Part shown: piece after piece, positions 9,601 to 63,720 of the stretch
How positions within the stretch are numbered: position 1 is the first letter of the stretch
Layout: each line of letters starts with the position of its first letter
Source: Haliotis cracherodii
Lineage: Eukaryota
DNA length: 64,000 nt
NCBI RefSeq assembly: GCF_022045235.1
Contig: NW_027266275.1
Location: 31,248,001 to 31,312,000 of the forward strand
Direction: 5' to 3'
Notes under the pieces: model-generated
What the model saw: the letters and a program-made list of their open reading frames with translations, nothing else
Databases searched by the model: none
What the model was told of the DNA's origin: nothing
Made by a program: the position numbers and the translations under genes

Positions 9601-12600
9601 GTAAAAAAATATTAAATGACGGTTTTATATGATTAACTCTCTGGTGCCTGGAATAAAGTGCTTGCAAAAACAACAGCTTAAATTCTAATTGCTGATAAGA
9701 CATTCACATGCCTAGATTAGAGATTCCATGGAGGAGAACTCAGATCTTCAGACCTGATTTTAATCAGATTGCATCTGATGTGTCTTCCACACAGGTGTTC
9801 CCGCCTAAGAAAACTAAGATCGGAGACTGGTCGGCGCAACAGAAACAGTCCACTATAGCTGCGATCGAGAGGCTCAAGGCGGCTGGGGACCAGAAGATGC
9901 TCACCGAGAAACTCACTAAGCTTGCTTCAATGCTCAACGTCGACAGTAGGTGTCAGAACTTCACCACACCACAATTGTCAGTGTTGTGTCTGGTGTTTAA
10001 ATGTTTGTTTGGTTTGTTTGTTGTTGTTTTTGGTTTGTTTTTGTTTTTTGTGTTTTTGTTTGTTTTTGTTTTTGTTTTGTTTTGTTGGTTGGGGGGGTGG
10101 TTAACGCCGGACTCAGCAATATTCCAGCTATATGACAGCGGTCTGTAAATAATCGAGATTGGACCAGAAAATCCAGTGACTGATATCATGAGCCTCGATC
10201 CACACAATTGGCATTGACCACTCGATCCCGTTAGTCGCCTCTTACGACAAGCATGGGTTGGACCATTCTTACCCGGATCGTCATCGGTGGGTGTTGAAAT
10301 GACGACCACAGGAGTGATGACACAAAATTGATGCTTCACGAGACCCATTTATGAAAGTAGATATAATCATCAATGTTATCATCTTAACTCTCTGATTACA
10401 CAGTGACGATATCCGCTCATCCAGGAGTGAGTGTGGATTTTCATCAGTAAAACCCTCAAAATGCGGACTTGGTATAATTGTACTGTGTCCTTGGCCTTCA
10501 CTCACGAAACTTATTAATCAGAAGACCGATCCATCATGTTCAACCGTTTCGCGAACACCTGGTGTCATCACTGTATTCTGGAGTGTACACTTATGGTCTT
10601 GAATGTAGCACTTTGCTTTCATTTTTCTTGCATAAATACCAAGACGCTGTGTAACATCCTGGATTATTTTAAAACTGTTTCAGGACATACGTTTAATCGA
10701 GATACTTACGAGATAAACAATCTGTGTTTTCAATGTAGAGCAAGCTTACATGTACATTTAACTGGTACAGTTAACCGCGCTGAAGTGAATTTCGACGAAC
10801 GTGCAGCGTGTGTTTGCAAATGTTAAATTTAGACCTTATAGCACTTGGTCACACCGAAAGTCCAAAACGTGCTTATTGTCAGCCATTTGAGCATTTCTGA
10901 TAATTTTCCTATCAAGATGTCAGTCATCTGAACATAACTAATAAATATATCTGACAAGGTGTACCTTGATTGGCCATTCCGGTGGGTAGCGGGGGCACGG
11001 GTGGCCCAGTCGTCTAAGGCGCCGCGATTCGCTGTGCAGAGTTGTGTCCCTTGGGCACGCCAGAAACCTATGATTGTGGGTTCGAATCCCGGTTCGCCCT
11101 GATTGTGTTTCTAGGTTTGTCAGCACCATACCCGTGCTCGTGGGTTTCACCAAGGTGGTAAACGTCTGAGACCTGCATCACTTCGGGCTTTCCTCCCACA
11201 TTAAGCTTACACGCCGTGATATAACTGGAATAATGTTAAAAGCGGCGTTAAACCCAACTCAGTCAGTCAGTCAGTCCGGTGGGTAGCAGAGGTCTTTATT
11301 CTAACCTGGCCTTTTTATGCATCTTTTTGTTACAGAAGCTCATAACAATCCTGGTGCACCTGTGTCATCAACTTCTGACTTCAATGGAGGTGTGGGTGGG
11401 GGCAGTGGCATGGATGGGGTGAGTATTGGCTGTATTAACAGTATTATGCTTGGACAGAGACGTTTAAAAATGGTTCTTGTGTCACTTTAACCCTGCGTGT
11501 CCGTCATTTGTATTGCCATAAAATACATATCTTTGAAATGTCCTGCCGCATATGAAACATACACCGTTTACTTATCTAAATAAAATAAATGTTTGGCAAG
11601 TGTACTGAAGGCTAAGGTCAATGCGTGCCCAGTGGTGTCTTTGGGTATTCTAGGTTGGGGGGGGGGGGGGGGGGGGGGGGTATAAATATTGTTTGTTTTC
11701 ACTAAAAACATATATTAATATAAACTTCTACCGCCCTCCTTACTTTTGGAAAAAATGTTCCAGAGAAACATTTTTATGCAGCCTTATGGGTTTCAACTTC
11801 TTCTTTTCTTTCATTGCTGTGTCCTTATTGTTACTGCATATAGGTATCAATTTCAAGCTTGACTAAATTGAGATCAAACTTACCAAATGTATCCGATTTG
11901 TAACATTCCTAGGTTTCGAAAGAGTCCTCAACATCAAAGGTCTATTTATATTCAGCCATGCTAGCCAATGAATCACTGTACTGAATAAACAAAGATTTGT
12001 TTTGTTGTTTCCTATCAGTAAATATAATATAGGTCAGTTGGTATATCCTGCCATACATACGACACCCGACATCCCTACTATATGCACAACACGTGGTAAA
12101 AGTGGACATATTTGAAAGAAATATCTTAAACCAGACTTAAATCTTTCAATCCCCAAGAGATTGTCCTATTTTCGGTGTCCCTCCGCTGATTACCTCTGAC
12201 CCACCACCCCTATAACCCATGACCAGTTCCTCAATTGACCTTGAGCCGACCGTAAATTCGAGCATCATATCACATTATTTATTTTGTAACCTCATCTCCT
12301 TTACTTTATTCTAATTACACATTTAAATCAAACTGGCTGTACTGAATATATTTTTTCTCGAAAGGAAAATCCCTTCGGAGGTATGGACATGTCTGGATTC
12401 GGTGGAATGGATCTCAACGCCTTCTCAGGAAACATCAATATGACAGGCATACAATCTGGATTTCCAGGAGGTGGTGGTGGATTTCCTGGAGGTGGTGCAG
12501 GACTTACAGGAGGTGGTGGTGGATTTCCAGGAAGTGGTGGTGGACGTACAGGAGGTGGTGGTGGATTTCCAGGAAGTGGTGGTGGACGTACAGGAGGTGG

Positions 12601-24600: not shown

Positions 24601-27600
24601 GCGACTAACGGGATCGGGTGGTCACGCTCGCTGACTTGGTTGATGCATGTCATCGATCCCAAATGCGTGGATCGATGCTCATGATATCAATCACTGGATT
24701 GTCTGATCCAGACTTGATTATTTACAGACCGCCATCATATAGCTGGAATATTGCTGAGTGACAACAAACAAACAAACAAACCAAATTATCCGTATGGTTT
24801 GAATAAAAAATATATACTTGCATTTCAACGATGGTAAGACAAACATCACACACATGAGTTTCATGTTCTGATTCGTATATTTTGAATAAGTTGTTTCTGT
24901 GAAATATTTAGACGAAAATCAATAATAAGAAACTGTCCTCTTTTAAGACCACTGGGATCTCTGAACTACGCCCGTGTGTGGCACGACAACTCCGGCAAAG
25001 GCAAGTTCGGGTCATGGTACCTGAAGTACCTCGTTGTCAGAGACGTGCAGACCGACCAGAAGTTTGTCTTCATCTGTAACAGATGGTTCGCTGTCGAGGA
25101 GGACGATGGACAGGTGTGTTAATTCGGAGAAAAGCCTGTTCTGTTTGAAATTTTGAGGTGGTTCATCGTAACATTTAGCGGTGTTTAATCAACGATGAAC
25201 CACCTCAAAATTTAAAACAGAAAAGGTTTATCTGTATTCTGACATACATAAAAAGCGTTATTTTTTTAAACGGACTCGTCGTCCATTTCTTGGAATCGCA
25301 ATGGTACAACCCATCGTTAGGTGTGTGTGGGGGGGACTTCTAAAGAGACACGATTACTGAACGGGGTTTATGTCTTTCGGTCTATATTGTTGAAATCATA
25401 TGTACTTATGGTACAAAATAACCAGGAAATAACAGAACATTGATTTATGCAGGACCTAGTTTTGCGTGGTGAGATCATTATCAATACAACACCCCTTCAT
25501 TCAAATAGAGTCAGGGGCGGGCGGGTAGCCTAGTGGTTAAAGCGTTCGCCCGTCACGCCGAAGACCCGGCGTGATATTGCTGGAATATTGCTAAAAGCGG
25601 CGTAAAACCATACTCACTCACTCAAATTGAGTCAACTATGACCTAGATCAGGCCATGCGTGAAGTTCAAACTTGGTGACCTAACTGATGTCGTTAATGTC
25701 GCAGATTGAAAAAGCGACTTATTTGTCTACATTATGCCGGGGTCATACCTTAAAGTTAGCAGCTTTGATTGTTTGTTTGTTGTTTAACACCGCACAAAGC
25801 AATATTTCAGCCTTTTGCCGGCGGTCTGTAAATAATCGAGTCTAGACCAGACAATCCAGTCGCCTTTTACGGCAAGCCTGGGCTGCTCAAGACCTATTCT
25901 ACCCCGGATCTTCACGGGTCTAAAGTCAGAAGTGGTTATCGCTCATGAGTAAACTTAATAAATCACATAAGATCATCCTTCAATGTCATGGTAAAATGAA
26001 GAATAATGTACACCAGCAATAAGACATAAAGTACCTAAATGTATTGGAGTGTTCTTGTCTAGAACTCAGTCTTCGTGTGTGTTGTGACTGCAGGTTGACC
26101 GTGTGATCCCCGTGGCTGGACTTGCCCAGATGACGGAGTTCGCGCACCTGTTCTCGGAGAGAACGAGAAAGAACCTTGTTGATGGTCACCTGTGGTTCTC
26201 AGTTGTCGCCCGACCCCCTCAGAGTCGCTTCACCCGTGTCCAGAGAGTGTCCTGCTGCCTATGTCTCCTGTACGCCACCATGTTGGCTAACGCCATGTTC
26301 TACAAGAAGTCAGAAGATGAGGCAGGAACATCTTTCACGTTTGGTCCCTTTGCTTTGAGTCCTCAACAGGTAACGATATAGTCATTCCAATTGGCTTTAC
26401 GCCTGACACGAAACAATGCTTCCTATCAGTATACTAATTGACAACGGATGTAAAATATTTCCCATTGTGAGTGTGTTTGATTCCTCAAAACTAATCAAAA
26501 GTGTAGATTGCATGTTAAGAATAATTTCTAATCTAGAAGGAAGGGAATACACCTTCAGTTGAAATTGTCGATCAACTTGGAACATTGGAATCCCCATCTA
26601 TAATAATATGCTTACGCCTGCTGAGTATGTGCAGTGAAATTACATGAATTTATTATTAATTCTTGGAACTACGTGAAGCGTGATGCATTATTTATGCCTT
26701 GGACTAATAGATATTCCCAATTGGATACCTTATATTACCATTAACAAGATCATCATTTCTCATTTATACGTGAGCGCCGATTATGTATTTACATATGTGA
26801 ATTCTGTTTACAGATCTATATTGGCATTGTATCCAATCTGATCGTATTTCCTGCAAACTTCGTGGTCATCATGCTGTTCCGGAAGTCACGAGCGAGAAGA
26901 AAGCGTCCGTCTCGTCTTGAAGAAGCGCTGAAGAAAGTGCCCAGTGGCGGTACGACATCGGTCAGCGACGTTCAGCCGGATGTGGGAGGGATCTGGGCAA
27001 TCGGTGGGAAATCAAGCGGTCAGATCCAGTCTAGACCCGAGAGTTCCTTCTCTCAGTCTTACGATCGCCCTCAAAGCAACTTGTCCCACAGAGGTGATAG
27101 AAGGAGGACAAGGAAACCGAAAAAGGAACTACCCTGGTTCTGCCGCTACATCGGTTGGCTACTGTTATGGATGGTTACTCTTGGGGCGGCTGCCATGGTA
27201 ACATTCTATGGGATCAGCTTCCAGGACGACAAATGCAAGAAATGGATCACGTCGATGCTGGTTTCGTTCTTCACGTCCATCTTCGTCACGCAACCCATCA
27301 AAGTGAGTGACAGAAACATAGGACTGTCCAATAACATACAGTAAACTACGGTTATAACGAACACGCTTATAACGAACTTACTGATATGACGAACTTACTT
27401 TTTTGGTCCCGACTATTTGCTGTAGTTATGTTGTATATATGCTTATAACGAACTACGGTTATAACGAACTAAAATTAGTAGTCCCTTTGAGTTCGTTATA
27501 ACCGTACTTTACTGTATCTGAATGGACGGGCATTCCTCGCAGGCCAGGCTTTTTTTAATTTGTTGATTTTGTGCGGTTGACGTTTTGTATTTCTTGTGTG

Positions 27601-45500: not shown

Positions 45501-48500
45501 TTCAATAAGTCAACCAAGAAAACCTGATGTAACCAAGTAAATATTATAAATTAGCTCGGTGTGACGAACGAACGCTCTAGCCACTAGGTTCCCTTACTGC
45601 CACATTTTGAAAACATGTTTACTATAGCATCGAGTACATTAGCTTAAACAGGCATGCGAGAGCGTATACCCTTTACATACCTCAAACGTCAGATGTTCTC
45701 CATAAGCACAACAGCGGATTGAACACTATCCATATACTTTCTTGTTATTCCAGCCGAGAAGTTGGGCTGTTTTAAGGAAAACAAAAGAGACCGCCACTTC
45801 AAACTAAGCCCGGGACACTATGACCCCCAATCCCTTACCCCTGAGAAATGTTCGAGTGTGTGCGGAGCATACATGGCCCCCTACGCTGGGATGACTGACG
45901 GACGGTTCTGCTTCTGTGGGTCCACTAAACCAGAACCGAGCTACAAGGCACCGGACGGGGATTGTACCAGCACCTGCTCAGGTGACGGCAAGAAGAAATG
46001 CGGGAGCCCTGATCACATTTCAGTGTATCACACCTTTCAGCCTATCAAAAAGGTTGAGCTGAAAGTCACTGGGAAATCCATTGTAGCAACGGGTGACCCG
46101 GTGACATTTGGTGTTAACGCTGAGGCAGGGTACAACATCTTCTACCAGATGAACTACGGAGATGGCACGGAAGGCATGGACAGAAACGCTACAGGGATGT
46201 TCACCAAAACGTACCACATTCCTGGCAAACATGTTGCCAAGGTCACAGCGTCAGATGATAGTGGTTCTGTGAAGGTTAGATGTGCATGTATAAAGTCAAG
46301 AATTGTAAGAAAAGTTCCTTATTGGTTTAAATAAATAGCATGGTCTAGAGAAAACAGGATCTCGGAATGTAACGTAGGTTACTGCAATCGTACTTCACCA
46401 TTCTCAATTTGATAGATTCTTTCTTTTTTTACACAAAATCAGAAAGCACGATTTGGGCATTTTAGCCCCTTGCCAAATTAAATGCCATCCATAGGACACA
46501 AAGTTCTATTCTTCTAGGTTAAACGTGTGTCCATTTTGGCACCCCAAATCATAAAGTCAGAATGTCTTAATGTCAGAATAAAATGATTATCAAAAAGGAG
46601 ATTTTGTACCTATTCCTGAGGTAGAACCTTTTTTTAACAAAGTTTTATTAACAACTAGGAAAATAAAATGCACTTTGTGTCGTGAGAACACTTCTTCATA
46701 GTATATTGTTAGACTTGGTTTGGATACTTGCCAAATCATAATCATGTAAAAGTATATCTACTCGCCCATTGTTGCAGAAAACTGGCGTTGCGGGAGTAAC
46801 TGTACAGGCCCCAGTGAACAACGTAACCGTCGTCTGTCCCGACTTCAACAGCTACGAGACGCAGGCGTGTACGGTAACCATCACCCATGGCACAAACCTC
46901 CTCCTCCACGAAAAAGTCGACAACAAAGACAGGACTATTAAAATAGCAGGTACAAAACTGTAATCGGCAATTTTGGCCATGATCAGTAGTTGATCCCCAC
47001 TGGTCATATATTTTCCTGTGATGAGGATTAGGTAACCATAAGTTGCTGTTTAAGGGAGGGGGGATAACATATCATAATAATAATTCATCGTAATTTTGGA
47101 GCAGTTCCCACAAGAAGTAAAATGAGTTTCCAAACATTTATTTGAAATTGGTCAAGAAAAGAAGTTGTCATCAACATGTTTTCGACTTCTGTCTGTTACT
47201 ATTCAAACATATTCTGTTCTGTAGATCCTGTTATCGGCGTTGCTGGCTGTTGCGTTCCCTATACGGCGAAAGCACAACCAGAGAGCTTGTCAGGAGATGA
47301 TAATGCCATCTTCATCATGCCTGCTGCAGAGTTCAGATTTCATGGAGTTGTTACACACTGGGAGTTGTGGGCGGACACAGCAGGCAAACTGACAGTCATG
47401 GTAATATGAACTTGAATTTCATGGTGAAATGTTAATTTGTTTACTCAGATGTGTAAATACAATGGTTCAGATAAACGTTATTTATGCACACATTTATGTA
47501 TGTATTTATGTCCACTTATCGACAATCAAGAGACCTCTCTGAAATCTGTTTCATTATTCTTGCTGTTTAAAGGTTCTGAAGCCTGATTGTGATGACTACT
47601 GCTATGAGACAAACACATGTGGAGGGCAATGTAAAGGAACCACATGTTCCTCAGATACAGGTTACTGTCATAAAGCTGGAACCTGCTCCAAAGATTGTAA
47701 AGAAACAGACCGGTACCCATCAGACAACCCCTTAGTTGACTATGTAGAACGTCAATCCGTTGAGCTGACAGTTTCCAAGGGCCATCAAGTTGTAGAATGT
47801 CCATATATGGATATTTTCCCTGGCGATATCATCGCCTATAAAAAATCAACAGGGTCTGCCACCATTACAGTGTCAAAGAAAGAGACAACATGTGATCGCA
47901 AATACGATGGGACAGAGAAAAAATTCACCAAGAACTCCGGAAATCCAGTTTCCAAGACCCGTCACCACCTGAGGGCCATCTACTCCAGTCAGACAAAAGT
48001 TTCTCTGGACTATAAATTCCAAGTAGCTAAGAAATACACCTTGAGTGTAAACGTAAGTAATGTTGACATTGAAGGCTCTATAACTGCTACGACAGAGATC
48101 GACGTTCAGGAGGGCATCAATGCTTCAATCCTTGTTGGCCCCAAATACCTTGCCGTCAACACAGAGGGCATCTTTACCATCCTCCCTCACACAGGTATGT
48201 TCAGCCATCGTGCAACATAGCTCAATTAGTCGATAGAGTCAGGCTTCTGGTAATGAGTATGGCATCAGTCTTGAGTTATTGTTCATTGGTTTGTAGCCGC
48301 TCTACGCATTTAATACAAGGACATGCCTATTACGTAAATCATTTTTGTCTTAATGTGGAGTATCTCATGTCCTAGTTTGGATGATTGTGTTTACCATTTT
48401 TCTTCCCTGATCAAGTTTGGAAATGTCTATAAACCGTGTTGCAGGTTCTTCCGTTAAACGAGACTGGGATTTTGGAGACAAGAGTACATTCAACGCCACA

Positions 48501-51500
48501 AACACTGACCAATACAAACACACTTACACCTCCAAGGGAGTGTACAAGATAAAAATCAGGTGCTGGAATTCGCAGAATACCAAAGAGAACGCTTCCATTG
48601 TGACTGTGGAAGAGGTAATAGTTGGCATCAGTGTTAAATACGCTCCATGTATTACGCTGTCCAACTGCAGCTTTGAAGTGACAGTCACAGGAGGCTCCAA
48701 CTATGAAATTACATGGGACTTTGGTGACTTAACAAGCAACATAACTACGGAAGCTGAGTACTTAGAAAGCCATGTGGTGAACCATGTGTATAATATGGGC
48801 GGTAATCTGTCTGTCACTGCCAACTGTTCCAATCACGTCAGTTCCAAGTCTTTCACATTCTTCCTACCTGTGCAGGAGGTGTGCGCTGGGTTGTCTCTTA
48901 TTAGAACAGGTGCAGAAAAGGACGTACCTTTTACAATTGCATGGACACTAGATCATGGTTCCGACTGTAAGTTTGACCTCACATTCCGTGGGCAGCCGAT
49001 TGCAATTGAGAAAGCTAACGCGACCACTAAGAGATGGGAAAGTGGAAGGCAGAATGGTCTGCCTGCTAACATATATCCGCTGATCCTCAAAGTACACAAT
49101 GCAATTGGTCATGATGAGAAGCATGTCAATTTTACTGTTGAAACTGCTATGAAAGGAATGAAATCCAACTGTAGTGCTCCTTTGATTAGCACTGGCGAAG
49201 AAGCTTCATGTTTTGTGACTATCGAAGAGGGATCAAATGTGCGGTGCGTTTGGGACTTTGATGATGGAACAGTCGAACGTTTCAACCAAGGCCCACAGGA
49301 TTGGGCATTGCGAGCCAGCACCCCAGAGGTCCGTAAACACGTATTTACAAAGGGCAAGAATTACAATGTCACGATTACCTGTTCCAACAATGACAGAAGC
49401 GAACCTCACTACCACTCAATTCTCGTCATGCATGGTGTCAATGATGTCGAGTTCGAGCATGAGAACGCCGTACTCTTCGCTAGACCGGGAATAGGAATAT
49501 TTACCTTTAAAGCACCAGGTGCTGATCCTAATGATGCTAAGGTTCAATTTTCCTTTGGTGACAATCAATTTGACACAAAAGAACTAAAAATGAACTTTAA
49601 CTACACCCACCGTTACCGTGATGCGGGATGCTACAGGCTTTATGTCAGAATCTGGAATAATGTCGGGACAAAGATATTTAACAACAGCCAAATCTGTGTC
49701 ATTGAGAAGATTGTCGGCCTGAAGGTTCTCACCGAACCTGTTGCTGCTATCATCAACCAACCTCTTGTTGCCAAGGTGATCATGAAGTTTGGACCTGCTG
49801 GAAGCCTTACAAACATAACCTGCAACTATGGAGACGGAGAAGGGAGCAAATCATTCCTAAGACAAGGTACAAATTTGTAACATTGATGTTTATATTACTC
49901 TGGTCACCTTGATTTATGTAATATCAATAAGGAGTTGCTTATCTATCATTCGTTTTTTATTAATTATATTTATAACATTTAAAAATATTGCAGTAAATAT
50001 TATCATGGTTGTTATTAGAAGTAGTTCTTGTTTCAACGTGGCACTAGTATTGTTACTGGCCTAGAGTATGTGTAAGTGAGTTTGGTTTAACCTGGCTTTG
50101 AAGAGTATTTCAGTTACATCAGGGCGTGTACCATGTCAACTAGATGTGGAAGGAAAGCCCGTTGACTCCATTTAACGGGTACCACTGTGGTGAACCCAGC
50201 TCACAAATTTAAACACATAATCAGGGTAAACTGGGATCACGATCATTGGTTTCTGGCTGGACGCAAACCTGCACTGACAACATCTTCCCGAGGCAAGAGC
50301 GTCCTCTAGCCTTTTTATCAAAGAATTGTTTCCACCCTTGCCACATCAAGCCCACTTTCCTGTGTTAAATATGAATGGACTATGGCACATATCGCTAGCC
50401 CAATCAGATAACGTTTTACAAAATCAACATCCACGACTGGTACACATTCGTATAAAAGTGATAAACCGCTGTCATTCTTTGTTGATACGAATATGTGTTT
50501 TCCATCTTTTAAAGCCCCCAACGATTGCCTATGTTTTTGTGTAAGGGATGAAATCGCCGATGTTTTCGTTATCTGATTGATTAGGGCGTCGCCTATGGTA
50601 GTCGCCATCTTTGTGAATCTATACGAGATAAGAACAGCGATCTGATTAGATATCACGTTTTCATTACAAGGGGCACAACTCGAGATCTACGCGAGGTGGC
50701 GCCAGGGTCGCATGGCCACCCATGACCCGGCCTTTTTAGAGAGAATGGTATCTGCCTCTATGTATGATCATTGTTGCCATATTCATATGTGCCTTTAACT
50801 GACAGATAGCCATCTTAAACACAACTGTTTCTGTAATATGTTCAGTCTCAGTGAACATCCTCATTATTTGTTCAAGGCAAACAGATAGATGGCGAGGATG
50901 TCAGGTCCATTACCTACAAGGAACTGGGGGAGAAGACCATCACTTGTGACATTATAACGCCCCTCGAAACTATGACTGCTTCCTATAAAGTCAAGGTGGA
51001 CCAGGAAGTGTCTACGAATAACTGTCACATCACCACCAATTACCCTGTTGAACACGGAAGTAAGTCGGTGCTCAGATAACTGACATATCACCACCAATTA
51101 CCCTGTTGAACGCGGAAGTAAGTCAGTATTAGGTAGCTGTCTCATCACTGCCGATTACCCTGTTGAACACGGAAGTAAGTCGGTGCTCAGATAACTGACA
51201 TATCACCACCAATTACCCTGTTGAACGCGGAAGTAAGTCAGTATTTAGGTAACTGTCTCATCACTGCCGATTACCCTGTTGAACACGGAAGTAAGTCGCT
51301 ATCGGTACTCGGATAACAGACACATCAACACCAACTACCCTAACTTCCACATTATAACAATTTATCCTGTAAACATGAAGAAAGTTTATTTGATTTAAAC
51401 AAGCTGCTTGTTATAGTAAGTGATCTCATTATTCTCTGTTATTTTTATTTTTATTATTATTATTAAGCATTATCGTGTAGGGGAGTTTCCATTTCTATTT

Positions 51501-57500: not shown

Positions 57501-59753
57501 TTTAAAAGTGGAATAGCTGAGACATCTATCCCTATACACTTGTGACATGCGGTCATGAATTTCTTGGTCAAAAACCTGTTGACTGCTCTGTATTCGTCCT
57601 TTTCCATATTTGTATCCATTCCGGCCCCAATCACGTTCAACTGGCTGTCACTAATATACAAACGGCCTCAATAGACCAAATACACTTGCAATGAACTTCT
57701 CAAACAATGTACCACATTGACATGGTCACTTTGTTATGACCAATAGTTGAAAGTTAGTCAGGCTTAGAACTTTTTGACCATCCATCGTATTCTGAATTAT
57801 TCTGTATTGAGTTACTGTAGTAAACGTAACAGAATGGGAATTAGTCCAGTATATTCTGCTTTAAGGAGTAAAAGTAACTGCATTCTGGTTATCTTGTCCA
57901 AAGAGTTAAATGCCTCCTTTAGGCCGTATTACTAAGCTGTGTGGTACATAAAGGTTCCAAATTCATTCTGAATATAACGCTTGATGGGGATATTTCACTC
58001 CAAATCTATCTTCAATCATCATCTATTCTTAATTGATAACACATCATATTGTTCACATGTATGATATTTTTAATTCTAATTGAAAGAGAAGGAAGGCAAT
58101 ATGACGCTCGCCGGTCATACCACGGGGTCATGTTTCGGTCTCGCGAGGCAACGAAAACGCAAAATCAAATGTCAATGGCTTTTCAGCCAATTTCCGTTTT
58201 TAAAATGCCCCTGTGTCAAACGTGGAGTTCCATAAGAAATGACCGAGCGACACCAAGATATAGAAAATCATAATTTTAAATCCCAAATGCCTCTCAATAG
58301 GAAAGAAAGGTATCGCTGATCGGTTGTATATCCATTTAATGCTGGACATAAACAAATTCTTGGTTATTCTTGCTGTACAAAAGGTATGAAAACAGAGACG
58401 ATTTCAATCAAACCATCCATGTACAAACTCCACCCTGATGTGAAGAAGTACCGCTTCTCCTGCAAGTGCCGACAGGGTGATGGAGACTATGGCAAGGCTT
58501 CCCTCAACATTGAGCTGAACCCTCCTCCCCAGCCCGGTAGCTGCGTCATATCTCCAAGGAACGGCACCATTGGCTTCGACAACAAAAGCCCCTTCAACGT
58601 TAAATGTAGCGGATGGAAGGATGAGACAGAGATTGTAGAATATAAGTTTTTCTGTGAGTAAATTGCACTTATTGTGTATTGCTGAATTTTGTGCAAATGA
58701 TAACCATTATTACACATACATTTAGATGTGATGTCCAGTTAATATGGCGAATTTGCTTGACACTCAATCACACCGAACCTGTCCCTTTTACTGATATGCG
58801 TATTGGCAGGCATCATGCCCAATCCTGTTTTGACGTCCAATCAATCCTATGAATGGGTGGCTTTATTTCAATGCTATGTATAAAACGAAATCATTTTGAT
58901 GACCAAAATGCAGCGTACCGAATGTGCCTGTTCCTGACAACTGGGGTACACGTTACTAGCAACATCAATAATTCAAAGATGCCTTCTATGATCACGAGGC
59001 CAGGAACAAACATTTTCGAAAACCACCACTGTTGCTTGGAATATATGATGTCTCGAACGTGGTTCAACAAAACAAGACACTTACAAAACCCAAGAGAAGA
59101 TAATTGTTTCATGTGCAACAAAAAAAATTCGAAGTTATATATCGTATGCACTTGATGTGGTGTCCAGGCGCAATTTGTTCAGTTTATATTGTTCCTAGAC
59201 TGTGTTCTCGTGTATATTCGTTGGGTCTATGCACAGACAAACTTCCCTTCTGTGCAGTATATAGTATGCCAGCTGTAAGGTTACCTTGCTCTATATGTAG
59301 GCACCCACAAGAACAGCAAACTGCACCAACAAATTACCACCTTCGAAGAGGCCGAAGACGTCACGATTGACCCCCCACTCGGCGCTGATGACGATCAGTA
59401 CCGCGAACACGTCTACGTGTCTGTCAAGGACTCCATGGATGCAGCCTACGTCTACGACCTCGGAATCATACAGGTAAACAGTTATTAGCTGGCTTGATTC
59501 TGGTTTCCTGAAAGCATTCTCTAAATGTATGTTTTTAGATTGTGGTATTGCACACGGAACTCACTAGACTGCGTTCTAGATTCTGGTAACATTCAAGTAA
59601 TCTTACCACACAATGTGCTGGTGTTACAAGCTGCCCTCTTGGCCTTGTGGGTAGTGTTGTTAAATTCATGTAAGACTCTCTTCAACTAACTGACTATGTG
59701 TCTAGTTACGGTTATGCACAGAACATGTAACCATTAACACTAAGTACTACAGT

Positions 59754-59784
<31 letters not shown>

Positions 59785-62700
59785 GGTTAAAGCGTTCGCT
59801 CATCACGCCGAAGACCCGGGTTCGATTCCCGACATGGTTACAATGTGTGAAGCCCATTTCTGGTGCCCCCCGCCGTGATATTGCTGAAATATTGCTTAAA
59901 GCGGCGTAAAACCATACTCACTCACTACAGTGTGGACCCGTGAAGATTCCGGGGTAGAATAGATCTTCAGCAACCCATGCTTGCCGTAAAAGGTGACTAT
60001 GCTTGTCGTAAAAGGCGGCTAAGGGGATCGGGTGGTCAGGCTTGCTGACTTGGTTGATATATGTCATCGATCCCAATTGCATGGATCGACGCTCATGATA
60101 TTACTCACTGGGGTGTCTGGTCCAGACTCGATTATTTACCAACCAACTACAGTGTGAAATTTAAGGTCAGGGTTGAATAGTGTATGCTTGACTCCTGGCA
60201 TGATGGAGAGTCAGGCTTGAATAGTGTATGTTTGACACTTCACGTGGTTAAGTGCCAGGGTTAAATTTTGCATGTCATGACGGAGAATCAGGCTTGGTTC
60301 GTCCATGTTAGACTCCCCACATGGTCGAGAGTCAGGGTTGAATCTTGTATGACTGACTGTTCACATTGCGGAGATTCGGGGTTGAATCCTGTATGGCTGG
60401 CACCTACTAACAAGACAGAGAGTAAATGTGGAACATAGTATAGTTGAATTCATCAGGGTTAGTAGTGTATGGCTTATATTTTGGGTCGAGCATTGCATGT
60501 TTGATATCTCGACATGACACCTAGTCAGTGCTAAACGTTCCATGGTTGTGTCCCCGTAACAGGTGTTCCCCAACACGGCTAACATGGGAGACTGGTCAGC
60601 TCAACAGAAGAACAACGCTTTGAACGAGATCGAAAAGGTTACTGCTTCTGGAGATCAGAAATCAGTCACGGAGAAACTCACCAAGCTGGCCTCCCTGCTC
60701 AACGCTGACAGTAAGGGATATAACTAACTAATACCAAACTATTAACCATATCTTCCAGCTTACACTTTTCGAGAAAGCTTGGTGTCGTCACTGATTTTCA
60801 GTGATCCATTCATATAGTCTGCACCGCTTGTTGTCTTTTATGGCCATTGGAATCAGTTTCGGTGGATAATCGAAACTTCATATATAGAAAGACGTAGGAG
60901 TAACCTTGCTACAAAGCGGCAAAGCAAAGACTGTTATTTCAGCTGAGGTAGACGTGTTATAAAAGCGACAACACCCTTCCAATAATCATAAGAGTCAATT
61001 GTACGATTCCGACTATATGTATCATAAACATTTGTTTATGAATCAGGGTTGAATCTTTTACGCTTGACTCCTTACCTGGCAGGGAGTCAGGGTTGAATCT
61101 TGTACGCTTGACTCCTTACCTGGTGTAGAGTCAGGGTTGAATTTTGTATGTTTGACTCCTTACATGGAGGAGAGTCAGGGTTGAATAGTGTATGTTTGAC
61201 TCCTTACATGGCGGAGAGTCAGGGTTGAATCTTGTATGTTTGACTACTTACATGGCGGAGAGTCAGGGTTGAATAGTGTATGTTTGACTCCTTACATAGC
61301 GGAGAGTCAGGGTTGAATAGTGTATGTTTGACTCCTTACATGGCGGAGAGTCAGGGTTGAATAGTGTATGTTTGACTCCTTACATGCTGTAGAGTCAGGG
61401 TTGAATAGTGTATGTTTGACTCCTTACATGCTGTAGAGTCAGGGTTGAATAGTGTATGTTTGACTCCTTACATGGCGGAGAGTCAGGGTTGAATAGTGTA
61501 TGTTTGACTCCTTACATGCTGTAGAGTCAGGGTTGAATAGTGTATGTTTGACTCCTTACATGGCGGAGAGTCAGGGTTGAATAGTGTATGTTTGACTCCT
61601 TACATGCTGTAGAGTCAGGGTTGAATAGTGTATGTTTGACTCCTTACATGCTGTAGAGTCAGGGTTGAATAGTGTATGTTTGACTCCTTACATGGCGGAG
61701 AGTCTGAGGTATGGTTTATGCTTTCAGAGGCACACAATAAACCAGGGGCTCCGGGTCTGGCATTGACAGAGTTCCAGCCCATGGGTGGGGTGAGTATCCT
61801 GGTACCCTGTATTATCGTTCAGATTACAGTATGCCTGTATAAAGATGCATATGGGGTTTTTTCTAATCAGCCATGGATTTGCTAGGCAAATGTGCATTTC
61901 TGTTGTTGTATACTGAATGAAATGTTATATTAAAAAACTATTGTTCTCTTTCCTTCAGGTGGGTGTTGATATCAGTGGTGTTGCTGGACCATCAAACATG
62001 GGCATGGTCAATTTTGGAAACGCTGGGGCGGGTGCTCCAGGGATGGGCAATTTTGGAGCCGGTGGGGCGGGTGCTCCAGGGATGGGCAATTTTGGAGCCG
62101 GTGGGGCAGGTGCTCCAGGGATGGGCAATTTTGGAGCTGGTGGAGCGGGTGCTCCAGGGATGGGCAATTTCCAGCCTGGTGGGGCCGGGGCACCCGCATT
62201 ACCAGGATTCCAAATGGCTGGCGCTGGGCCTCCAGGACTACCGGGATTTCAAATGGCTGGCGCTGGGGCACCAGGACTTCCAGGACTACCGGGATCTCCA
62301 ACTGGTGGCGCGGCCGGGTTACCTGGCATGGGCAGTTTTGGAGCTGGTGGTGCCGGGGCTCCTGGGATGGGCAAGTTTGGAGCAGGTGGGGCGGGTGCTC
62401 CAGGGATGGGCAATTTTGGAGCCGGTGGGGCGGGTGCTCCAGGGATGGGCAATTTTGGAGCTGGTGGAGCGGGTGCTCCAGGGATGGGCAATTTCCAGCC
62501 TGGTGGGGCCGGGGCACCCGCATTACCAGGATTTCAAATGGCTGGCGCTGGGCCTCCAGGACTACCGGGATTTCAAATGGCTGGCGCTGGGCCACCAGGA
62601 CTACCAGGACTACCGGGATCTCCAACTGGTGACGCGGCCGGGTTACCTGGAATGGGCAGTTTTGGAGCTGGTGGAGCCGGGGCTCCTGGAATGGGCCAGT

Positions 62701-63292
62701 TTGGAGCAGGCGGGGCCGGCGCTCCTGGGATGGGCCAGTTTGGAGCAGGGGGGGGCGGCGCTCCTGGGATGGGCCAGTTTGGAGCTGGCGGGGACGGGGC
62801 TCCTGGGATGGGCAATTTCAAGCTTGACGGGGCTGGGGCACCAGGACTACCAGGATTTCAAATGGCTGGCTCCGGAGTACCAGGGCTACCAGGTTTACCA
62901 GGTGTTGGTGGTGGTGAAGGAAGTGCACTTGGCAATGGAATGGTTCTTTCAGCTTTCAAGACTGCGTCCGGCGTCGGAGGCCTAGATTTTGTAGTAAGCT
63001 GCTTTTGAATCACTGTATACATAACCCGACTCTCTGTTATATGCATCTCTATTTATACTGGCGGATTTGCGGTATTTTCTTCTGACGTTCTTCTCAATAG
63101 TACACAATTCTGAATAAATCAGTGTCTTCACAGCACGTAAACCTGCCAAACCTTAAACTCCAGTTTGCCTCTTGATTTGATCCTATTAATATTTTGAGTT
63201 ATTAATATTCCTGCCAATATATGTAGGGATCTCCAGCAGAGCGTAAAGCACTCATCCACAAGGCTGAAGAAGAACGGGATAACAAGGCTAAG
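39563..63292 (+). CDS. Gene B: tandem polycystin-1-like paralog, 3' part outside window
   Basis: Exons: 39563-39601, 39721-39748, 45754-46274, 46778-46949, 47225-47400, 47573-48194, 48445-49866, 50877-51059, 51579-51793, 52842-52998, 53659-53759, 53951-54829, 55077-55306, 56342-56535, 58384-58653, 59301-59473, 60563-60710, 61728-61789, 61959-62993, 63227-63292. Phases join in frame, and exons from 48445 onward match gene A exons one-to-one. The first two exons are less certain. Confidence 0.9.
40095..40278. mobile_element. Small foldback/MITE-like element with a tRNA-like fragment
   Basis: Outer arms TGTAACWAATGTTATATTTGGG (21/22), inner hairpin 40199-40256, minus-strand B-box GGTTCGAATCCC. 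Confidence 0.55.
40893..41055 (-). mobile_element. SINE family 1 copy
   Basis: Reverse-complement head and tail. Confidence 0.88.
41211..41425 (+). mobile_element. SINE-like family 2 copy (internally deleted)
   Basis: ACCCGTGAAAGCCCGGGTTAGAATTGGTCTTCAG start, (CAAA)n tail. Confidence 0.8.
41516..41685 (+). mobile_element. SINE family 1 copy
   Basis: TSD AATACTACCAAG. Confidence 0.9.
43819..44083 (-). mobile_element. SINE family 3 copy
   Basis: TSD AGTAAYTGAAGA. Confidence 0.85.
45754..46274 (+). CDS. Gene B exon: WSC domain plus first PKD repeat
   Basis: LGCF..TPEKC..C..YAG..GRFCFCG..C..C.G..CG..ISVY (8 Cys), then NYGDG. Confidence 0.9.
48445..49866 (+). CDS. Gene B exon: multiple PKD repeats
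   Basis: WDFGD x2, WDFDDG, FSFGD, CNYGDG. Confidence 0.92.
50430..50608 (-). pseudogene. Decayed RecQ-like SF2 helicase fragment, probable transposon remnant
   Basis: SLTQKHRQSLGALKDGKHIFVSTKNDSGLSLLYECVPV resembles the Q-motif/Walker A region (G.DVF...TGSGKSLCY..P). Confidence 0.5.
51019..51340 (+). repeat. 57-58-nt tandem repeat of exon end plus splice donor (alternating dimer)
   Basis: GGAA|GTAAGT at 51060, 51118, 51175, 51233 and 51291. Confidence 0.95.
56631..57787 (-). mobile_element. Decayed mariner (Tc1/mariner) DNA transposon
   Basis: Frameshifted transposase: MEKDEYRAV, RSGR, VTVDETWVYHYDPE, HDNASSH, HPPYLPDL; degenerate TIRs (25/33 counting the TA) and TA flanks. Confidence 0.9.
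59780..59923 (+). mobile_element. SINE family 1 copy (5' end replaced by a G-run)
   Basis: Body and tail match the 7769 copy. Confidence 0.85.
59935..60145 (+). mobile_element. SINE-like family 2 copy
   Basis: TSD ACTACAGTGTG. Confidence 0.88.
61043..61703. repeat. 44-nt minisatellite (~15 units); degenerate relatives at ~60165-60480
   Basis: AGAGTCAGGGTTGAATAGTGTATGTTTGACTCCTTACATG(GCGG/CTGT). Confidence 0.95.
61959..62993 (+). CDS. Gene B Gly/Ala/Pro/Met-rich exon (345 codons) inserted in the GAIN region
   Basis: TTCAG|GTG acceptor and GTA|GTAAGC donor, phase 0/0; 13-aa units GNFGAGGAGAPGM and GFQMAGAGPPGLP. Confidence 0.85.
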
Positions 63293-63492
63293 GTAGATTT
63301 TATACTTCAGCCTTTTTAGAATATAGACATATGGTTTTTTTCACAACACACGAGTAGACTCTCTTAACCGATCAGTCTCTCTTGTCGGTACTCTTCTTAT
63401 GTTCTTGGACACTCGTCACTCGTTATATAGCGTGCTCTCTGTTAAGCAAGGCTCCCCACAAACAGGCGTTTCTATATTAGCATGATCTCTTT

Positions 63493-63720
63493 GAGTGAGT
63501 CGGCGTGTCAGCTTAATGCGGGGGGAAAGCCCGAAGAGATGCAGGTCTAAGACGTTTACCACTTTGATGAAACCCACGAGCGCGACCATGGAGCTGACAA
63601 ACCTAGAAACATAACCGGGGCGAATTGGGATTCGAATCCTTTATCATAAGTTTTAGCGTGCCCAAGGGACGCAACTCATGAATTACCCCGCCTTACACAC
63701 GACTGGGCCATCCGTGACCC
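63493..63720 (-). mobile_element. SINE family 3 copy (degenerate)
   Basis: Reverse-complement similarity to the 10991 copy. Confidence 0.75.

What the first reader, a model, noticed from the sequence alone, without database searches (positions are those of the whole stretch)
61959..62993. Gene B cassette: abductin/elastin-like 13-mer repeats replace gene A's repeats
Seen: 345 codons, phase 0/0, at the same position as 12365-13723 with homologous flanking exons (KAHN.PGAP before, KAEEERDNKA after). It is built from 39-nt units (GNFGAGGAGAPGM, GFQMAGAGPPGLP) with a near-perfect 324-nt higher-order duplication. It is hydrophobic and nearly uncharged, versus Arg/Gln-rich in gene A. Established: Gly/Met/Phe repeats characterise molluscan abductin. 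Inference: composition and length are conserved while sequence turns over by independent expansion, as expected for a hypervariable mechanical or recognition module.
Basis: partly seen in the sequence, partly recalled or inferred. Interest (0 to 1): 0.76.

Follow-up and report, generated by a model that had tools for sequence, protein, structure and literature searches.

The report
Rubber-like repeat exon in abalone polycystin
A real, spliced exon of an abalone polycystin-1-like receptor gene encodes a 345-residue floppy, greasy repeat segment that sits just before the receptor's self-cleaving module; it resembles elastic proteins only in composition and its function has not been tested.

Summary
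Window 61959-62993 is an open, phase 0/0 exon of 345 codons. It is built from 39-nt units arranged in a 324-nt higher-order repeat. It belongs to gene B, the third of three tandem polycystin-1-like genes in the order C-A-B, in what is evidently the black abalone genome.

- **Transcription:** An RNA-derived contig joins the upstream exons to the predicted acceptor, and two contigs stop exactly at the predicted donor.
- **Annotation elsewhere:** NCBI protein models of Haliotis rufescens and H. asinina contain the same segment in the same frame.
- **Selection:** Differences between repeats fall mostly on third codon positions of that frame only, so the peptide is under selection.
- **Motif:** The core PGMGxF is kept across the genus while the unit number changes.
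- **Origin:** Paralogue C and 15 other homologues, at least four of them gastropod, carry only a 9-68 residue linker at this site. The cassette is therefore a Haliotis A/B-specific expansion or extra exon.
- **Abductin:** It is not abductin. Pro is 12% against 1%, Gly 37% against 58%, and the units are 13-mers rather than 10-mers. The composition is closer to elastin.
- **Variability:** It is not hypervariable between close species (324 of 332 aligned residues identical).
- **Function:** A compliant tether or a cohesive module is inferred, not shown.

The scan had already noted the sister cassette of gene A on this same window (s1-834463).

The parts
60563..60710 (+). Gene B exon encoding ...DWSAQQKNN...LASLLNAD, the conserved helix-like segment before the linker. 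It ends in phase 1.
   Evidence: Splice sites were read. The exon is collinear with gene A 9792-9959. It is 100% identical to H. rufescens P0151 residues 1826-1875. X1 contig record 1 covers it.
61043..61704 (.). Intronic 44-bp x 15 tandem repeat just upstream. It is not part of the coding cassette.
   Evidence: TRF reports 93% matches. The RNA-like run X1 has no depth over 61132-61614.
61728..61789 (+). Small 62-nt exon (K)AHNKPGAPGLALTEFQPMGG, phase 1 in and phase 0 out. It is the counterpart of gene A's exon near 11335-11410 and of paralogue C's single 34-residue linker exon.
   Evidence: Sequence. Gene A counterpart. Gene C exon. X1 depth in bins 61615-61936 fits 61 nt of a contig of depth 9.64.
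61959..62993 (+). Cassette exon of 345 codons, phase 0/0. It holds 14 PGMGxF... 13-mers, five GFQMAG units and PGLPGLPG connectors in three super-repeats.
   Evidence: Spliced contigs. The segment is present in P0151 residues 1897-2228. Third-codon-position excess.
62001..62324 (+). Higher-order repeat copy 1 (324 nt, 108 residues)
   Evidence: TRF period 324. It is 94.8% identical to copy 2.
62325..62648 (+). Higher-order repeat copy 2
   Evidence: Used as a 108-residue query with no hit at E<=0.01.
62649..62870 (+). Higher-order repeat copy 3 (partial, 222 nt, GQF variant units). It carries the extra 13-residue unit that H. rufescens lacks.
   Evidence: It is 85.6% identical to copy 2, with 21 synonymous and 11 non-synonymous differences. 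Indel placed.
63227..63295 (+). Downstream exon GSPAERKALIHKAEEERDNKAK, phase 0 in. It begins the helical region that leads to the GAIN/GPS module.
   Evidence: Gene A counterpart at 14362-14412. P0151 residues 2229-2251.
12365..13723 (+). Gene A's exon at the same position (453 codons, Gly/Gln/Arg/Phe-rich), included for comparison
   Evidence: Earlier finding s1-834463.

Best explanation
**What it is.** The stretch is a true coding exon of gene B. Gene B is the third of three tandem polycystin-1-like receptor genes (C, A, B) on one chromosome of an abalone, evidently Haliotis cracherodii. The gene's domain order is WSC, PKD repeats, REJ, GAIN/GPS, PLAT, then an 11-TM polycystin channel.

**What it encodes.** The exon encodes 345 residues of Gly/Ala/Pro-rich, nearly uncharged sequence with Met and Phe at regular intervals. 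This segment lies in the extracellular N-terminal part of the protein. It sits between the REJ module and the helical start of the GAIN domain, which holds the self-cleavage site.

**How it arose.** Relatives have a short, variable linker of 9-68 residues at this site. In the Haliotis A/B lineage an extra symmetrical exon was filled by tandem amplification of a 13-residue unit and then of a 108-residue super-unit. Selection keeps the peptide, especially the PGMGxF core. Unit number drifts, and copies are homogenised within a species.

**Most likely function (inferred).** The segment cannot fold, because Gly plus Pro make up 49% of it. I infer that it acts as a long compliant tether, an entropic spring or spacer with a contour length of roughly 130 nm. 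It would set the reach of the ligand-binding ectodomain and how displacement or force is passed to the GAIN/GPS module. Its regularly spaced Phe and Met residues would give it elastin-like weak cohesion.

**Shown and inferred.** Shown: the exon is real and spliced, it has positional homology with gene A's exon, it is under peptide-level constraint, and it is restricted to this lineage. Inferred: disorder, elasticity, extracellular location (by homology to polycystin-1), and any effect on signalling.
For: **Splicing.** X1 contig record 1 (869 nt) lies on 59301-59469, 60559-60710 and 61958-62087. The 61 letters in between match exon 61728-61789 by the depth arithmetic. X1 has zero depth in the intron bins. 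X1 record 6 and X3 record 22 stop exactly at 62993, with 48 and 70 further letters lying elsewhere (splice sites).

**Independent gene models.** P0151 (XP_048248826.1, H. rufescens, 3816 aa) and P0160 (H. asinina) contain the segment in this frame.

**Gene family.** Pfam finds WSC, PKD, REJ, GPS, Polycystin_dom and PKD_channel on separate exons. Gene B is collinear with gene A through the channel exon.

**Constraint.**
- Pairwise differences among the 14 units by codon position are 101, 132 and 501.
- Higher-order copies 2 and 3 differ by 21 synonymous and 11 non-synonymous changes, against 27.6% synonymous expected (binomial p = 8e-6).
- The other two frames show no such excess.
- P, G, M and F of the core are invariant in all 14, 13 and 18 such units in three species.
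- A relative's genomic contigs differ at about 2% within the cassette, against about 8% in a nearby intron (rough count from tables 3 and 8).

**Lineage restriction.**
- Paralogue C has a single 34-residue exon there and no cassette exon.
- Linker length is 9-68 residues in 15 other homologues and 54 in paralogue C, against 366 in P0151.

**Concerted change.** Both copies read APALP in the window and both read APGLP in H. rufescens.

**Composition.** P+G is 49%, 2P+G is 0.61, there is no C, Y or W, and there is no N-glycosylation motif. A high combined Pro+Gly content is the stated hallmark of disordered elastomeric proteins (PMC5703643, passages read).
Against: - Disorder rests on composition alone.
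- It is not known whether the helices on either side of the cassette pack together. If they do, the cassette is a large loop on the GAIN domain and not a tether in series, and it would carry no load.
- Transcript contigs cover only parts of the exon. X1 shows no depth in 62581-62741, so internal splicing or exon skipping in some transcripts is not excluded.
The run kinds are guesses, and tissues and species are coded.
- The H. asinina version is more charged (13 K/R and 18 D/E; 2P+G is 0.56), so hydrophobicity is not strictly kept.
- The pairs of repeats compared are not independent.
- No protein-level or functional data exist.
Confidence: 0.55

Rival explanations
1. Cohesive module. The segment works mainly through weak multivalent contacts between its regularly spaced Phe and Met residues, as in elastin coacervates or FG-type hydrogels. 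It would cluster receptors, or bind a matrix, mucus or egg-coat polymer, and would not act as a passive spring.
For: It has 12 FG and 33 PG dipeptides, Phe falls every 13 residues, it is nearly uncharged, and GRAVY is +0.24. The PGMGxF core, not merely the composition, is invariant across three species, which points to a motif-level function. Elastin-like Pro/Gly-rich hydrophobic sequences do phase-separate (PMC5703643, passages).
Against: No partner and no self-association is known. It lacks the Lys/Ala cross-linking blocks of elastin, having only 3 K+R. The H. asinina version carries many K and E residues. Nothing was tested experimentally.
Confidence: 0.2
2. Tolerated expansion. A minisatellite-like repeat grew inside a permissive linker. 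It is kept only in frame and free of harmful residues, and it has no function of its own.
For: The site is a variable, unconserved linker in all relatives. Paralogue C does without the exon. Unit number differs between species. The introns of these genes are full of tandem repeats.
Against: There is a strong excess of synonymous differences in one frame only. The 13-mer core has been retained since the split from H. asinina. Recent amplification alone could mimic part of this signal, but it would not explain the third-position pattern.
Confidence: 0.17
3. True abductin or elastomer gene fragment captured by exon shuffling.
For: The only support is shared enrichment in Gly, Met and Phe.
Against: Unit length, Pro content and Gly content differ. 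No hit was found among proteins of 59-189 or 190-604 residues. No other copy exists in the genome.
Confidence: 0.03
4. Non-coding repeat that is wrongly read as an exon.
For: Three frames of the repeat are open.
Against: Spliced RNA contigs, two independent gene models and frame-specific constraint all speak against it.
Confidence: 0.02

Closest known systems
Polycystin-1 / PKD1-like / sea-urchin REJ receptor family (the gene that holds the exon)
   Same: WSC, PKD repeats, a REJ module, a GPS motif (CYCNHLTTFG), and the polycystin domain plus PKD channel, all in the canonical order. Eight such TRPP1-like genes are described in H. discus hannai (PMC12980990, passages).
   Different: A 345-residue low-complexity exon lies between REJ and GAIN. 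In the alignment, 15 other homologues and paralogue C have 9-68 residues there.
Gene A cassette exon of the same window (12365-13723; earlier finding s1-834463)
   Same: Same intron position, phase 0/0, Gly-rich with about 6% Phe, and tandem-repeat built.
   Different: Its units are unrelated (GGFPG, ISFGGRAGGRGGGGG, GGPGGRFGGQGGGPGQSGGQ). It is polar and Arg/Gln-rich and is 453 residues long. There is no alignment beyond composition.
Abductin (scallop hinge-ligament elastomer)
   Same: It is molluscan, Gly-rich, has Met and Phe inside a short repeat, and has little charge (review PMC9999432).
   Different: Abductin has decapeptide repeats against 13-mers here, 58% against 37% Gly and 1% against 12% Pro, and it has no Ala-rich component. 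It is a 116-residue secreted matrix protein, whereas this is a segment of a membrane receptor.
Elastin hydrophobic domains / elastin-like polypeptides
   Same: High combined Pro+Gly, Ala-rich, non-polar, with a P-G pair recurring at fixed spacing. Such sequences are expected to be disordered, hydrated and able to recoil (PMC5703643).
   Different: There is no VPGVG-type pentapeptide and almost no Val (2.6%). There are no Lys-Ala cross-linking blocks. It is not a secreted fibre protein.
Entropic-spring and stalk segments of other mechanosensitive proteins (titin PEVK; Ser/Thr/Pro-rich stalks of adhesion GPCRs).
   Same: A long unfolded segment placed in series with folded extracellular or sarcomeric modules. 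Adhesion GPCRs also place it before a GAIN domain.
   Different: The composition differs: there are no charge-rich PEVK repeats and no glycosylated Ser/Thr. Whether this segment is load-bearing is unknown.
FG-repeat domains of nucleoporins
   Same: Phe-Gly dipeptides at regular intervals in a flexible, low-charge chain (12 FG).
   Different: This segment is extracellular by homology. Its spacers are Gly/Ala/Pro rather than polar Ser/Thr/Asn/Gln. There is no sequence relation.

Membership tests
Polycystin-1-like / REJ receptor (gene B as a whole) | Extracellular PKD (Ig-like) repeats and a REJ module | tested here: met
   PF00801 scores E = 1e-31 on 48417-49880. PF02010 REJ scores E = 9.6e-10 on 58326-58658. 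WSC scores E = 9.7e-16 on 45762-46334.
Polycystin-1-like / REJ receptor (gene B as a whole) | GPS autoproteolysis motif (HL|T) ahead of the first membrane span | tested here: met
   CYCNHLTTFGSGW is present in the exon at extended coordinate 74256-74495. PF01825 scores E = 6.2e-5, 23.9 bits against a cut-off of 22.5. Cleavage itself was not tested.
Polycystin-1-like / REJ receptor (gene B as a whole) | C-terminal polycystin domain plus PKD cation-channel membrane region | tested here: met
   PF08016 scores E = 4.7e-43 and PF20519 scores E = 2.1e-37 on L015:4494-5951.
Polycystin-1-like / REJ receptor (gene B as a whole) | PLAT domain after the first membrane span | tested here: inconclusive
   The PLAT-region exons are present and conserved, but they were not scanned for gene B. 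PF01477 is on record only for paralogue C, P0159.
Abductin | Repeating decapeptide [GGFGGMGGGX] | tested here: not met
   The unit is a 13-mer, PGMGNFGAGGAGA. The abductin motif comes from review PMC9999432.
Abductin | About 58% Gly and about 1% Pro | tested here: not met
   Gly is 37.4%, Pro 11.9% and Ala 17.4%.
Abductin | Small secreted matrix protein (116 residues when mature) of the bivalve hinge ligament | tested here: not met
   The segment is internal to a ~3,800-residue receptor of a gastropod.
Abductin | Sequence homology to abductin | tested here: inconclusive
   A 108-residue query found nothing at E<=0.01 among proteins of 59-189 residues. However, only 8000 candidates were scored, and no abductin sequence was compared directly.
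Elastin-like / self-assembling elastomeric proteins | High combined Pro + Gly content that prevents folding and amyloid formation | tested here: met
   P+G is 49% and 2P+G is 0.61. The rule is stated qualitatively in PMC5703643. The numerical threshold near 0.6 is recalled from Rauscher et al. 2006, which I did not read.
Elastin-like / self-assembling elastomeric proteins | Cross-linking blocks (Lys in poly-Ala) alternating with hydrophobic blocks | tested here: not met
   There are only 3 K+R in 345 residues, and none lies in an Ala run.
Elastin-like / self-assembling elastomeric proteins | Coacervation and reversible elastic recoil | not testable with these tools
   This needs recombinant protein.

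The most novel reading that the evidence does not exclude
Abalone have built an extracellular 'gating spring' into a polycystin receptor, and they have done it twice with opposite chemistries. Gene B carries a hydrophobic Pro-Gly-Met-Phe elastin-like segment, which would collapse on warming and could be switched by Met oxidation. Gene A carries a polar Arg/Gln/Gly resilin-like segment. The two neighbouring receptors would then differ in compliance, reach or clustering as a function of temperature or redox state. That would tune how force reaches the GAIN-hidden tethered agonist.
Probability: 0.1. Interest if true: 0.8.

Novelty: new variant of a known kind. Interest (0 to 1): 0.45.

Why it matters
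Polycystin-1 and adhesion GPCRs are thought to sense force through the GAIN domain. How the long ectodomain transmits that force is unresolved, and no experimental structure of a PKD1-type GAIN domain was available as of the 2025 paper whose passages I read.

This locus offers a natural series in one genome:
- three tandem paralogues with no cassette, a polar cassette, or a hydrophobic cassette at the same site;
- orthologues that differ by whole repeat units.

The series could be used to ask whether compliance ahead of the GAIN domain changes cleavage, shedding or signalling.

The locus also shows a low-complexity exon that is demonstrably under peptide-level selection. In addition, it is a practical warning for annotation: the database model of gene A reads its cassette in a different frame.

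Tried and rejected
- **Sequence relatives of the cassette.** None was found with a 108-residue super-unit, the whole exon, Pfam even at E<=10, or PDB sequences. The PDB search gave only two chance-level matches to Mediator subunit 8, at E = 0.23 and 0.43.
- **Other copies in the genome.** The protein search found only low-identity (40% or less) Gly-rich stretches, many with stops. The DNA search found only the exon itself.
- **Homology of the exon edges between A and B.** I expected it, but it is not significant. The fraction of shuffles reaching the observed score was 0.13-0.32. Homology of the two exons therefore rests on position and phase only.
- **Frame test on gene A's repeats.** It was inconclusive because its units alternate between 19 and 20 residues.
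- **Logan-derived cluster members P0152-P0154, P0156 and P0002.** These turned out to be genomic ORFs that run into introns, not transcripts.
- **Structure of the REJ-GAIN region of the short-linker paralogue.** This would decide whether the cassette is a loop or an in-series tether.
- **ESM Atlas.** It does not hold the sequence, and the embedding machine was closed.
- **Literature.**
  - Zero papers hold 'polycystin' + 'REJ domain' + 'glycine-rich'.
  - Three papers hold 'Haliotis' + 'receptor for egg jelly', and none of the three titles or abstract openings concerns such an exon.
  - The main text of the H. discus hannai TRP paper never mentions glycine, low complexity or disorder.
- **Spliced model.** Exons were searched one by one, and full-length comparisons used database proteins as given.

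Full report
**1. The observation**

Window 61959-62993 reads as 345 sense codons. It is bounded by a good acceptor (ttccttcag|G) and a good donor (GTA|gtaagc).

Tandem Repeats Finder reports a 39-nt period and a 324-nt period with 2.7 copies, 91% matches and score 1402.

In protein terms the exon has this layout:
- a 14-residue lead-in;
- three super-repeats, each of four or five PGMGxFGAGGAGA 13-mers followed by one or two GFQMAG units and a PGLPGLPG connector;
- a 35-residue non-repeat tail.

Super-repeat copies 1 and 2 are 94.8% identical (17 differences in 324 nt). Copies 2 and 3 are 85.6% identical. 'Near-perfect' therefore overstates it slightly.

Composition is G 37.4, A 17.4, P 11.9, M 6.4, F 6.4 and L 4.9%. 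There are 9 charged residues in 345. There is no Cys, Tyr or Trp, and no N-x-S/T motif. GC content is 0.53 here against about 0.40-0.44 around it.

An open frame is weak evidence in a repeat. Two other frames are also open, at 340 aa and at 205 aa on the minus strand. The frame therefore had to be fixed in other ways.

**2. The gene**

The window is G000:C12:31248001-31312000 of a 1.18-Gb genome in 80 contigs.

On the plus strand lie two paralogous genes. Exon-by-exon comparison shows 11 collinear exon pairs upstream of the cassette. After I fetched 27 kb beyond the window end, it showed 17 more pairs downstream, through the channel exon, at 57-98% amino-acid identity.

Pfam, run on single exons, gives these hits for gene B:
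- WSC (E = 9.7e-16);
- PKD repeats (1e-31);
- REJ (9.6e-10);
- GPS (6.2e-5, over CYCNHLTTFGSGW);
- Polycystin_dom (2.1e-37);
- PKD_channel (4.7e-43).

This is a polycystin-1-like / REJ-type receptor.

A 43-residue exon just after the cassette finds exactly three places in the genome, all on C12 and on the plus strand. The locus is therefore a tandem triplet, which I call C, A and B.

A database protein named polycystin-1-like [Haliotis cracherodii] (P0159) and an unnamed 3,680-residue protein that matches gene A (P0155) are both recorded on a contig of 82,358,895 bases. That is the exact length of C12. The genome is therefore evidently black abalone.

I built no spliced model and searched none. 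Exons were searched separately, and full-length comparisons used database proteins as they came.

**3. Is the exon used?**

One reads call was available.

*Run X1 (organism A, kind guessed as RNA).* It has depth only on exons and none in the intron bins 59522-59682, 60166-60487 and 61132-61614.

Its 869-nt contig (record 1) lies on 59301-59469, then directly on 60559-60710, then, after 61 unlisted letters, on 61958-62087. The depth figures in bins 61615-61775 (2.87) and 61776-61936 (0.78) equal 48 and 13 positions of a contig of depth 9.64. This places those 61 letters on exon 61728-61788.

The small offsets at the joints are alignment ambiguities: 'acag' occurs on both sides of one joint, and 'g' on both sides of another. 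A spliced transcript therefore enters the cassette at the predicted acceptor.

*The 3' end.* X1 record 6 and X3 record 22 end exactly at 62993, with 48 and 70 further letters lying elsewhere. Where those letters lie was not printed, because 916 joint rows were not shown.

*Interior and limits.* X1 record 5 covers 62141-62411 without gaps. Coverage of the interior is incomplete (no X1 depth in 62581-62741), so internal splicing in some transcripts cannot be excluded. A little X1 and X3 depth in bin 63064-63224, which is intron, is unexplained.

*Runs X9 and X12 (organism E).* Their contigs run straight through the exon-intron borders. They are genomic DNA of a relative.

**4. Independent models and the reading frame**

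The H. rufescens protein XP_048248826.1 (P0151, 3,816 aa) contains the cassette at residues 1897-2228 in the same frame, flanked by …LASLLNADKAHNKPGAP… and …GSPAEREALIHKAEEERDNKAK….

It matches the window at 324 of 332 aligned residues and lacks one 13-residue unit in the third super-repeat. Over all the aligned pieces the protein is about 97% identical (112 mismatches in 3,640 aligned positions).

The H. asinina model P0160 also contains the cassette.

The frame is confirmed by substitution pattern:
- Among the 14 PGMGxF units, pairwise nucleotide differences fall 101, 132 and 501 on codon positions 1, 2 and 3.
- Between super-repeat copies 2 and 3 there are 21 synonymous and 11 non-synonymous differences, where 27.6% synonymous is expected (p = 8e-6).
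- Copies 1 and 2 give 9 synonymous and 8 non-synonymous differences (p = 0.024).
- The other two frames show no excess.

The repeat pairs are not independent, but the direction and size of the effect are clear. The peptide, in this frame, has been under purifying selection while the copies diverged.

**5. How it evolves**

*Conserved motif.* P, G, M and F of the PGMGxF core are invariant in all 14 units of the window, 13 of H. rufescens and 18 of H. asinina.

*Conserved layout.* The three-block layout is also shared, but block sizes differ. My hand count from the printed sequences gives 4-5 / 5 / 5, 4 / 5 / 4 and 5 / 9 / 4 units. The super-repeat offset is 108 residues in the window and 149 in H. 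asinina.

*Rates.* H. rufescens against H. asinina gives 89% and 92% identity in the flanks, but 71% plus 55 gap columns in the cassette. Between the two close species the cassette is no more diverged than the rest of the protein.

A rough count from the reads tables gives about 2% nucleotide difference in the cassette for organism E and about 2.6% in a neighbouring exon. An adjacent intron shows about 8%. Mapping inside repeats biases this count.

*Homogenisation.* Both super-repeat copies read APALP in the window and both read APGLP in H. rufescens. This is what homogenisation between copies would produce.

The segment is therefore length-labile and somewhat fast over long times. It is motif-conserving, not hypervariable.

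**6. Where it came from**

At this site the alignment of 18 homologues gives linkers of 9-68 residues in 15 other proteins. Those named come from Patella and Babylonia; Physella was read separately. Paralogue C has 54 residues. P0151 has 366, and the gene A model has 271. Alignment of the most distant rows is uncertain.

I mapped paralogue C on the genome. Between the …LLNTESK exon and the …IEKYNIERDNNAA exon it has one 34-residue exon, phase 1 in and phase 0 out. This exon corresponds to the small 62-nt exon of gene B and to its gene A counterpart. Paralogue C has no counterpart of the cassette exon.

The cassette exon is therefore an addition of the A/B lineage, or a loss in C. It predates the split from H. 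asinina, because H. asinina already has the B-type units.

A and B cassettes share position and phase but no sequence. The interior alignment score is 347 against a shuffle mean of 348, and the edges are not significant.

Gene conversion does act between A and B elsewhere. One PLAT exon is 97.6% identical in nucleotides, against 74-82% for its neighbours. Even so, the cassettes have stayed distinct.

**7. What it most likely does**

By homology with polycystin-1, everything before the GPS is extracellular. The cassette lies after the last REJ exons and a conserved helix-like segment. It lies before about five further predicted helical stretches (my reading of the sequence, not a computation), and these lead to the beta-rich part that holds the GPS.

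Modelled PKD1-type GAIN domains have on average four and up to eight subdomain-A helices, with conservation fading toward the N-terminus. No experimental structure was available as of that 2025 paper (PMC11697300, passages read). The cassette is therefore at or just inside the N-terminal edge of the GAIN domain.

With 49% Gly+Pro the segment should not fold. High combined Pro and Gly is the stated basis of disorder and recoil in elastin and other self-assembling elastomers (PMC5703643, passages).

My best reading is a long compliant tether or spacer, possibly with weak elastin-like cohesion from its regularly spaced Phe and Met. It would alter how displacement of the WSC/PKD/REJ ectodomain reaches the GAIN/GPS module.

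Polycystin-1 is widely regarded as a mechanosensor, and its PKD and REJ modules have been studied by force spectroscopy (PMC2781709 and PMC3677617; I saw the search listing and abstract openings only).

The contour length of about 130 nm is my estimate from 0.38 nm per residue, a recalled figure.

All of this paragraph is inference.

**8. Comparison with known things**

*Abductin.* According to a review (PMC9999432, passages), abductin is a 116-residue secreted protein of [GGFGGMGGGX] repeats with 58% Gly and 1% Pro. Three of its defining features were tested here and not met. The shared trait is Met and Phe in a Gly-rich repeat.

*Elastin.* In composition the cassette is nearer to elastin (G/A/P-rich, non-polar). 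It lacks elastin's pentapeptides and cross-linking blocks.

*Sequence searches.* No sequence relative was found.

*Literature.* The gene family is known in abalone: eight TRPP1-like genes in H. discus hannai. That paper's main text does not mention any such segment. My searches found no paper that does.

**9. Verdict**

The cassette is real, expressed and paralogue-specific. It is not abductin-like in any strict sense and is not hypervariable, and its function is unproven.
- It is a new variant of a known kind: a polycystin-1-like receptor with a lineage-specific, selected, elastomer-like low-complexity exon.
- The earlier follow-up on gene A (s1-834463) reached a similar view of the sister exon.
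- The present work adds the frame-specific selection test, the cross-species motif conservation, the unit-number change, and the absence of the exon in paralogue C.

Noticed in passing
window 12365-13723 (gene A) and protein P0155: P0155 is the 3,680-residue database protein that matches gene A and is recorded on a contig of the window's own length. It reads gene A's cassette in a different frame (…GMDGEVVVDFLEVVQDLQEVVVDF… and …KLVDQAENLVDEVDQGNLVDK…), with internal splices. It does not use the Gly-rich frame that the flanking exon phases imply. This is probably an annotation error caused by all frames of the repeat being open.
   Followed up: partly
window 24949-25116, against gene B at 76403-76570 in extended coordinates (L016:5403-5570): One PLAT-region exon is 97.6% identical in nucleotides between genes A and B. 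Neighbouring exons are 74-82% identical. The similarity extends about 15 nt into the intron. This looks like a short gene-conversion tract between the paralogues.
   Followed up: partly
G000:C12:31187964-31201935 (loci L019-L021), about 46-60 kb upstream of the window: A third tandem paralogue (C; protein P0159, polycystin-1-like, H. cracherodii) has a single 34-residue linker exon and no cassette exon. Its introns here are larger, with about 3.7 kb before the linker exon.
   Followed up: partly
window 61043-61704; also 951-2054, 4352-4997, 51018-51298 and 60199-60351: The introns of both genes carry many minisatellites: 44 bp x 15, 29 bp x 38, 53 bp x 12, 58/115 bp and 77 bp x 2. The 44-bp array lies only 24 bp upstream of the small exon that precedes the cassette.
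   Followed up: no
window 59787-60151 and about 63500-63720: These are high-copy interspersed repeats. The second has at least 40 copies at 82-86% identity across many contigs. Both attract enormous contig depth in all four runs.
   Followed up: no
window 63064-63224 (intron after the cassette): The two RNA-like runs show a small depth here (X1 1.63, X3 1.31) that the listed contigs do not account for. It may be unspliced precursor or an alternative acceptor.
   Followed up: no
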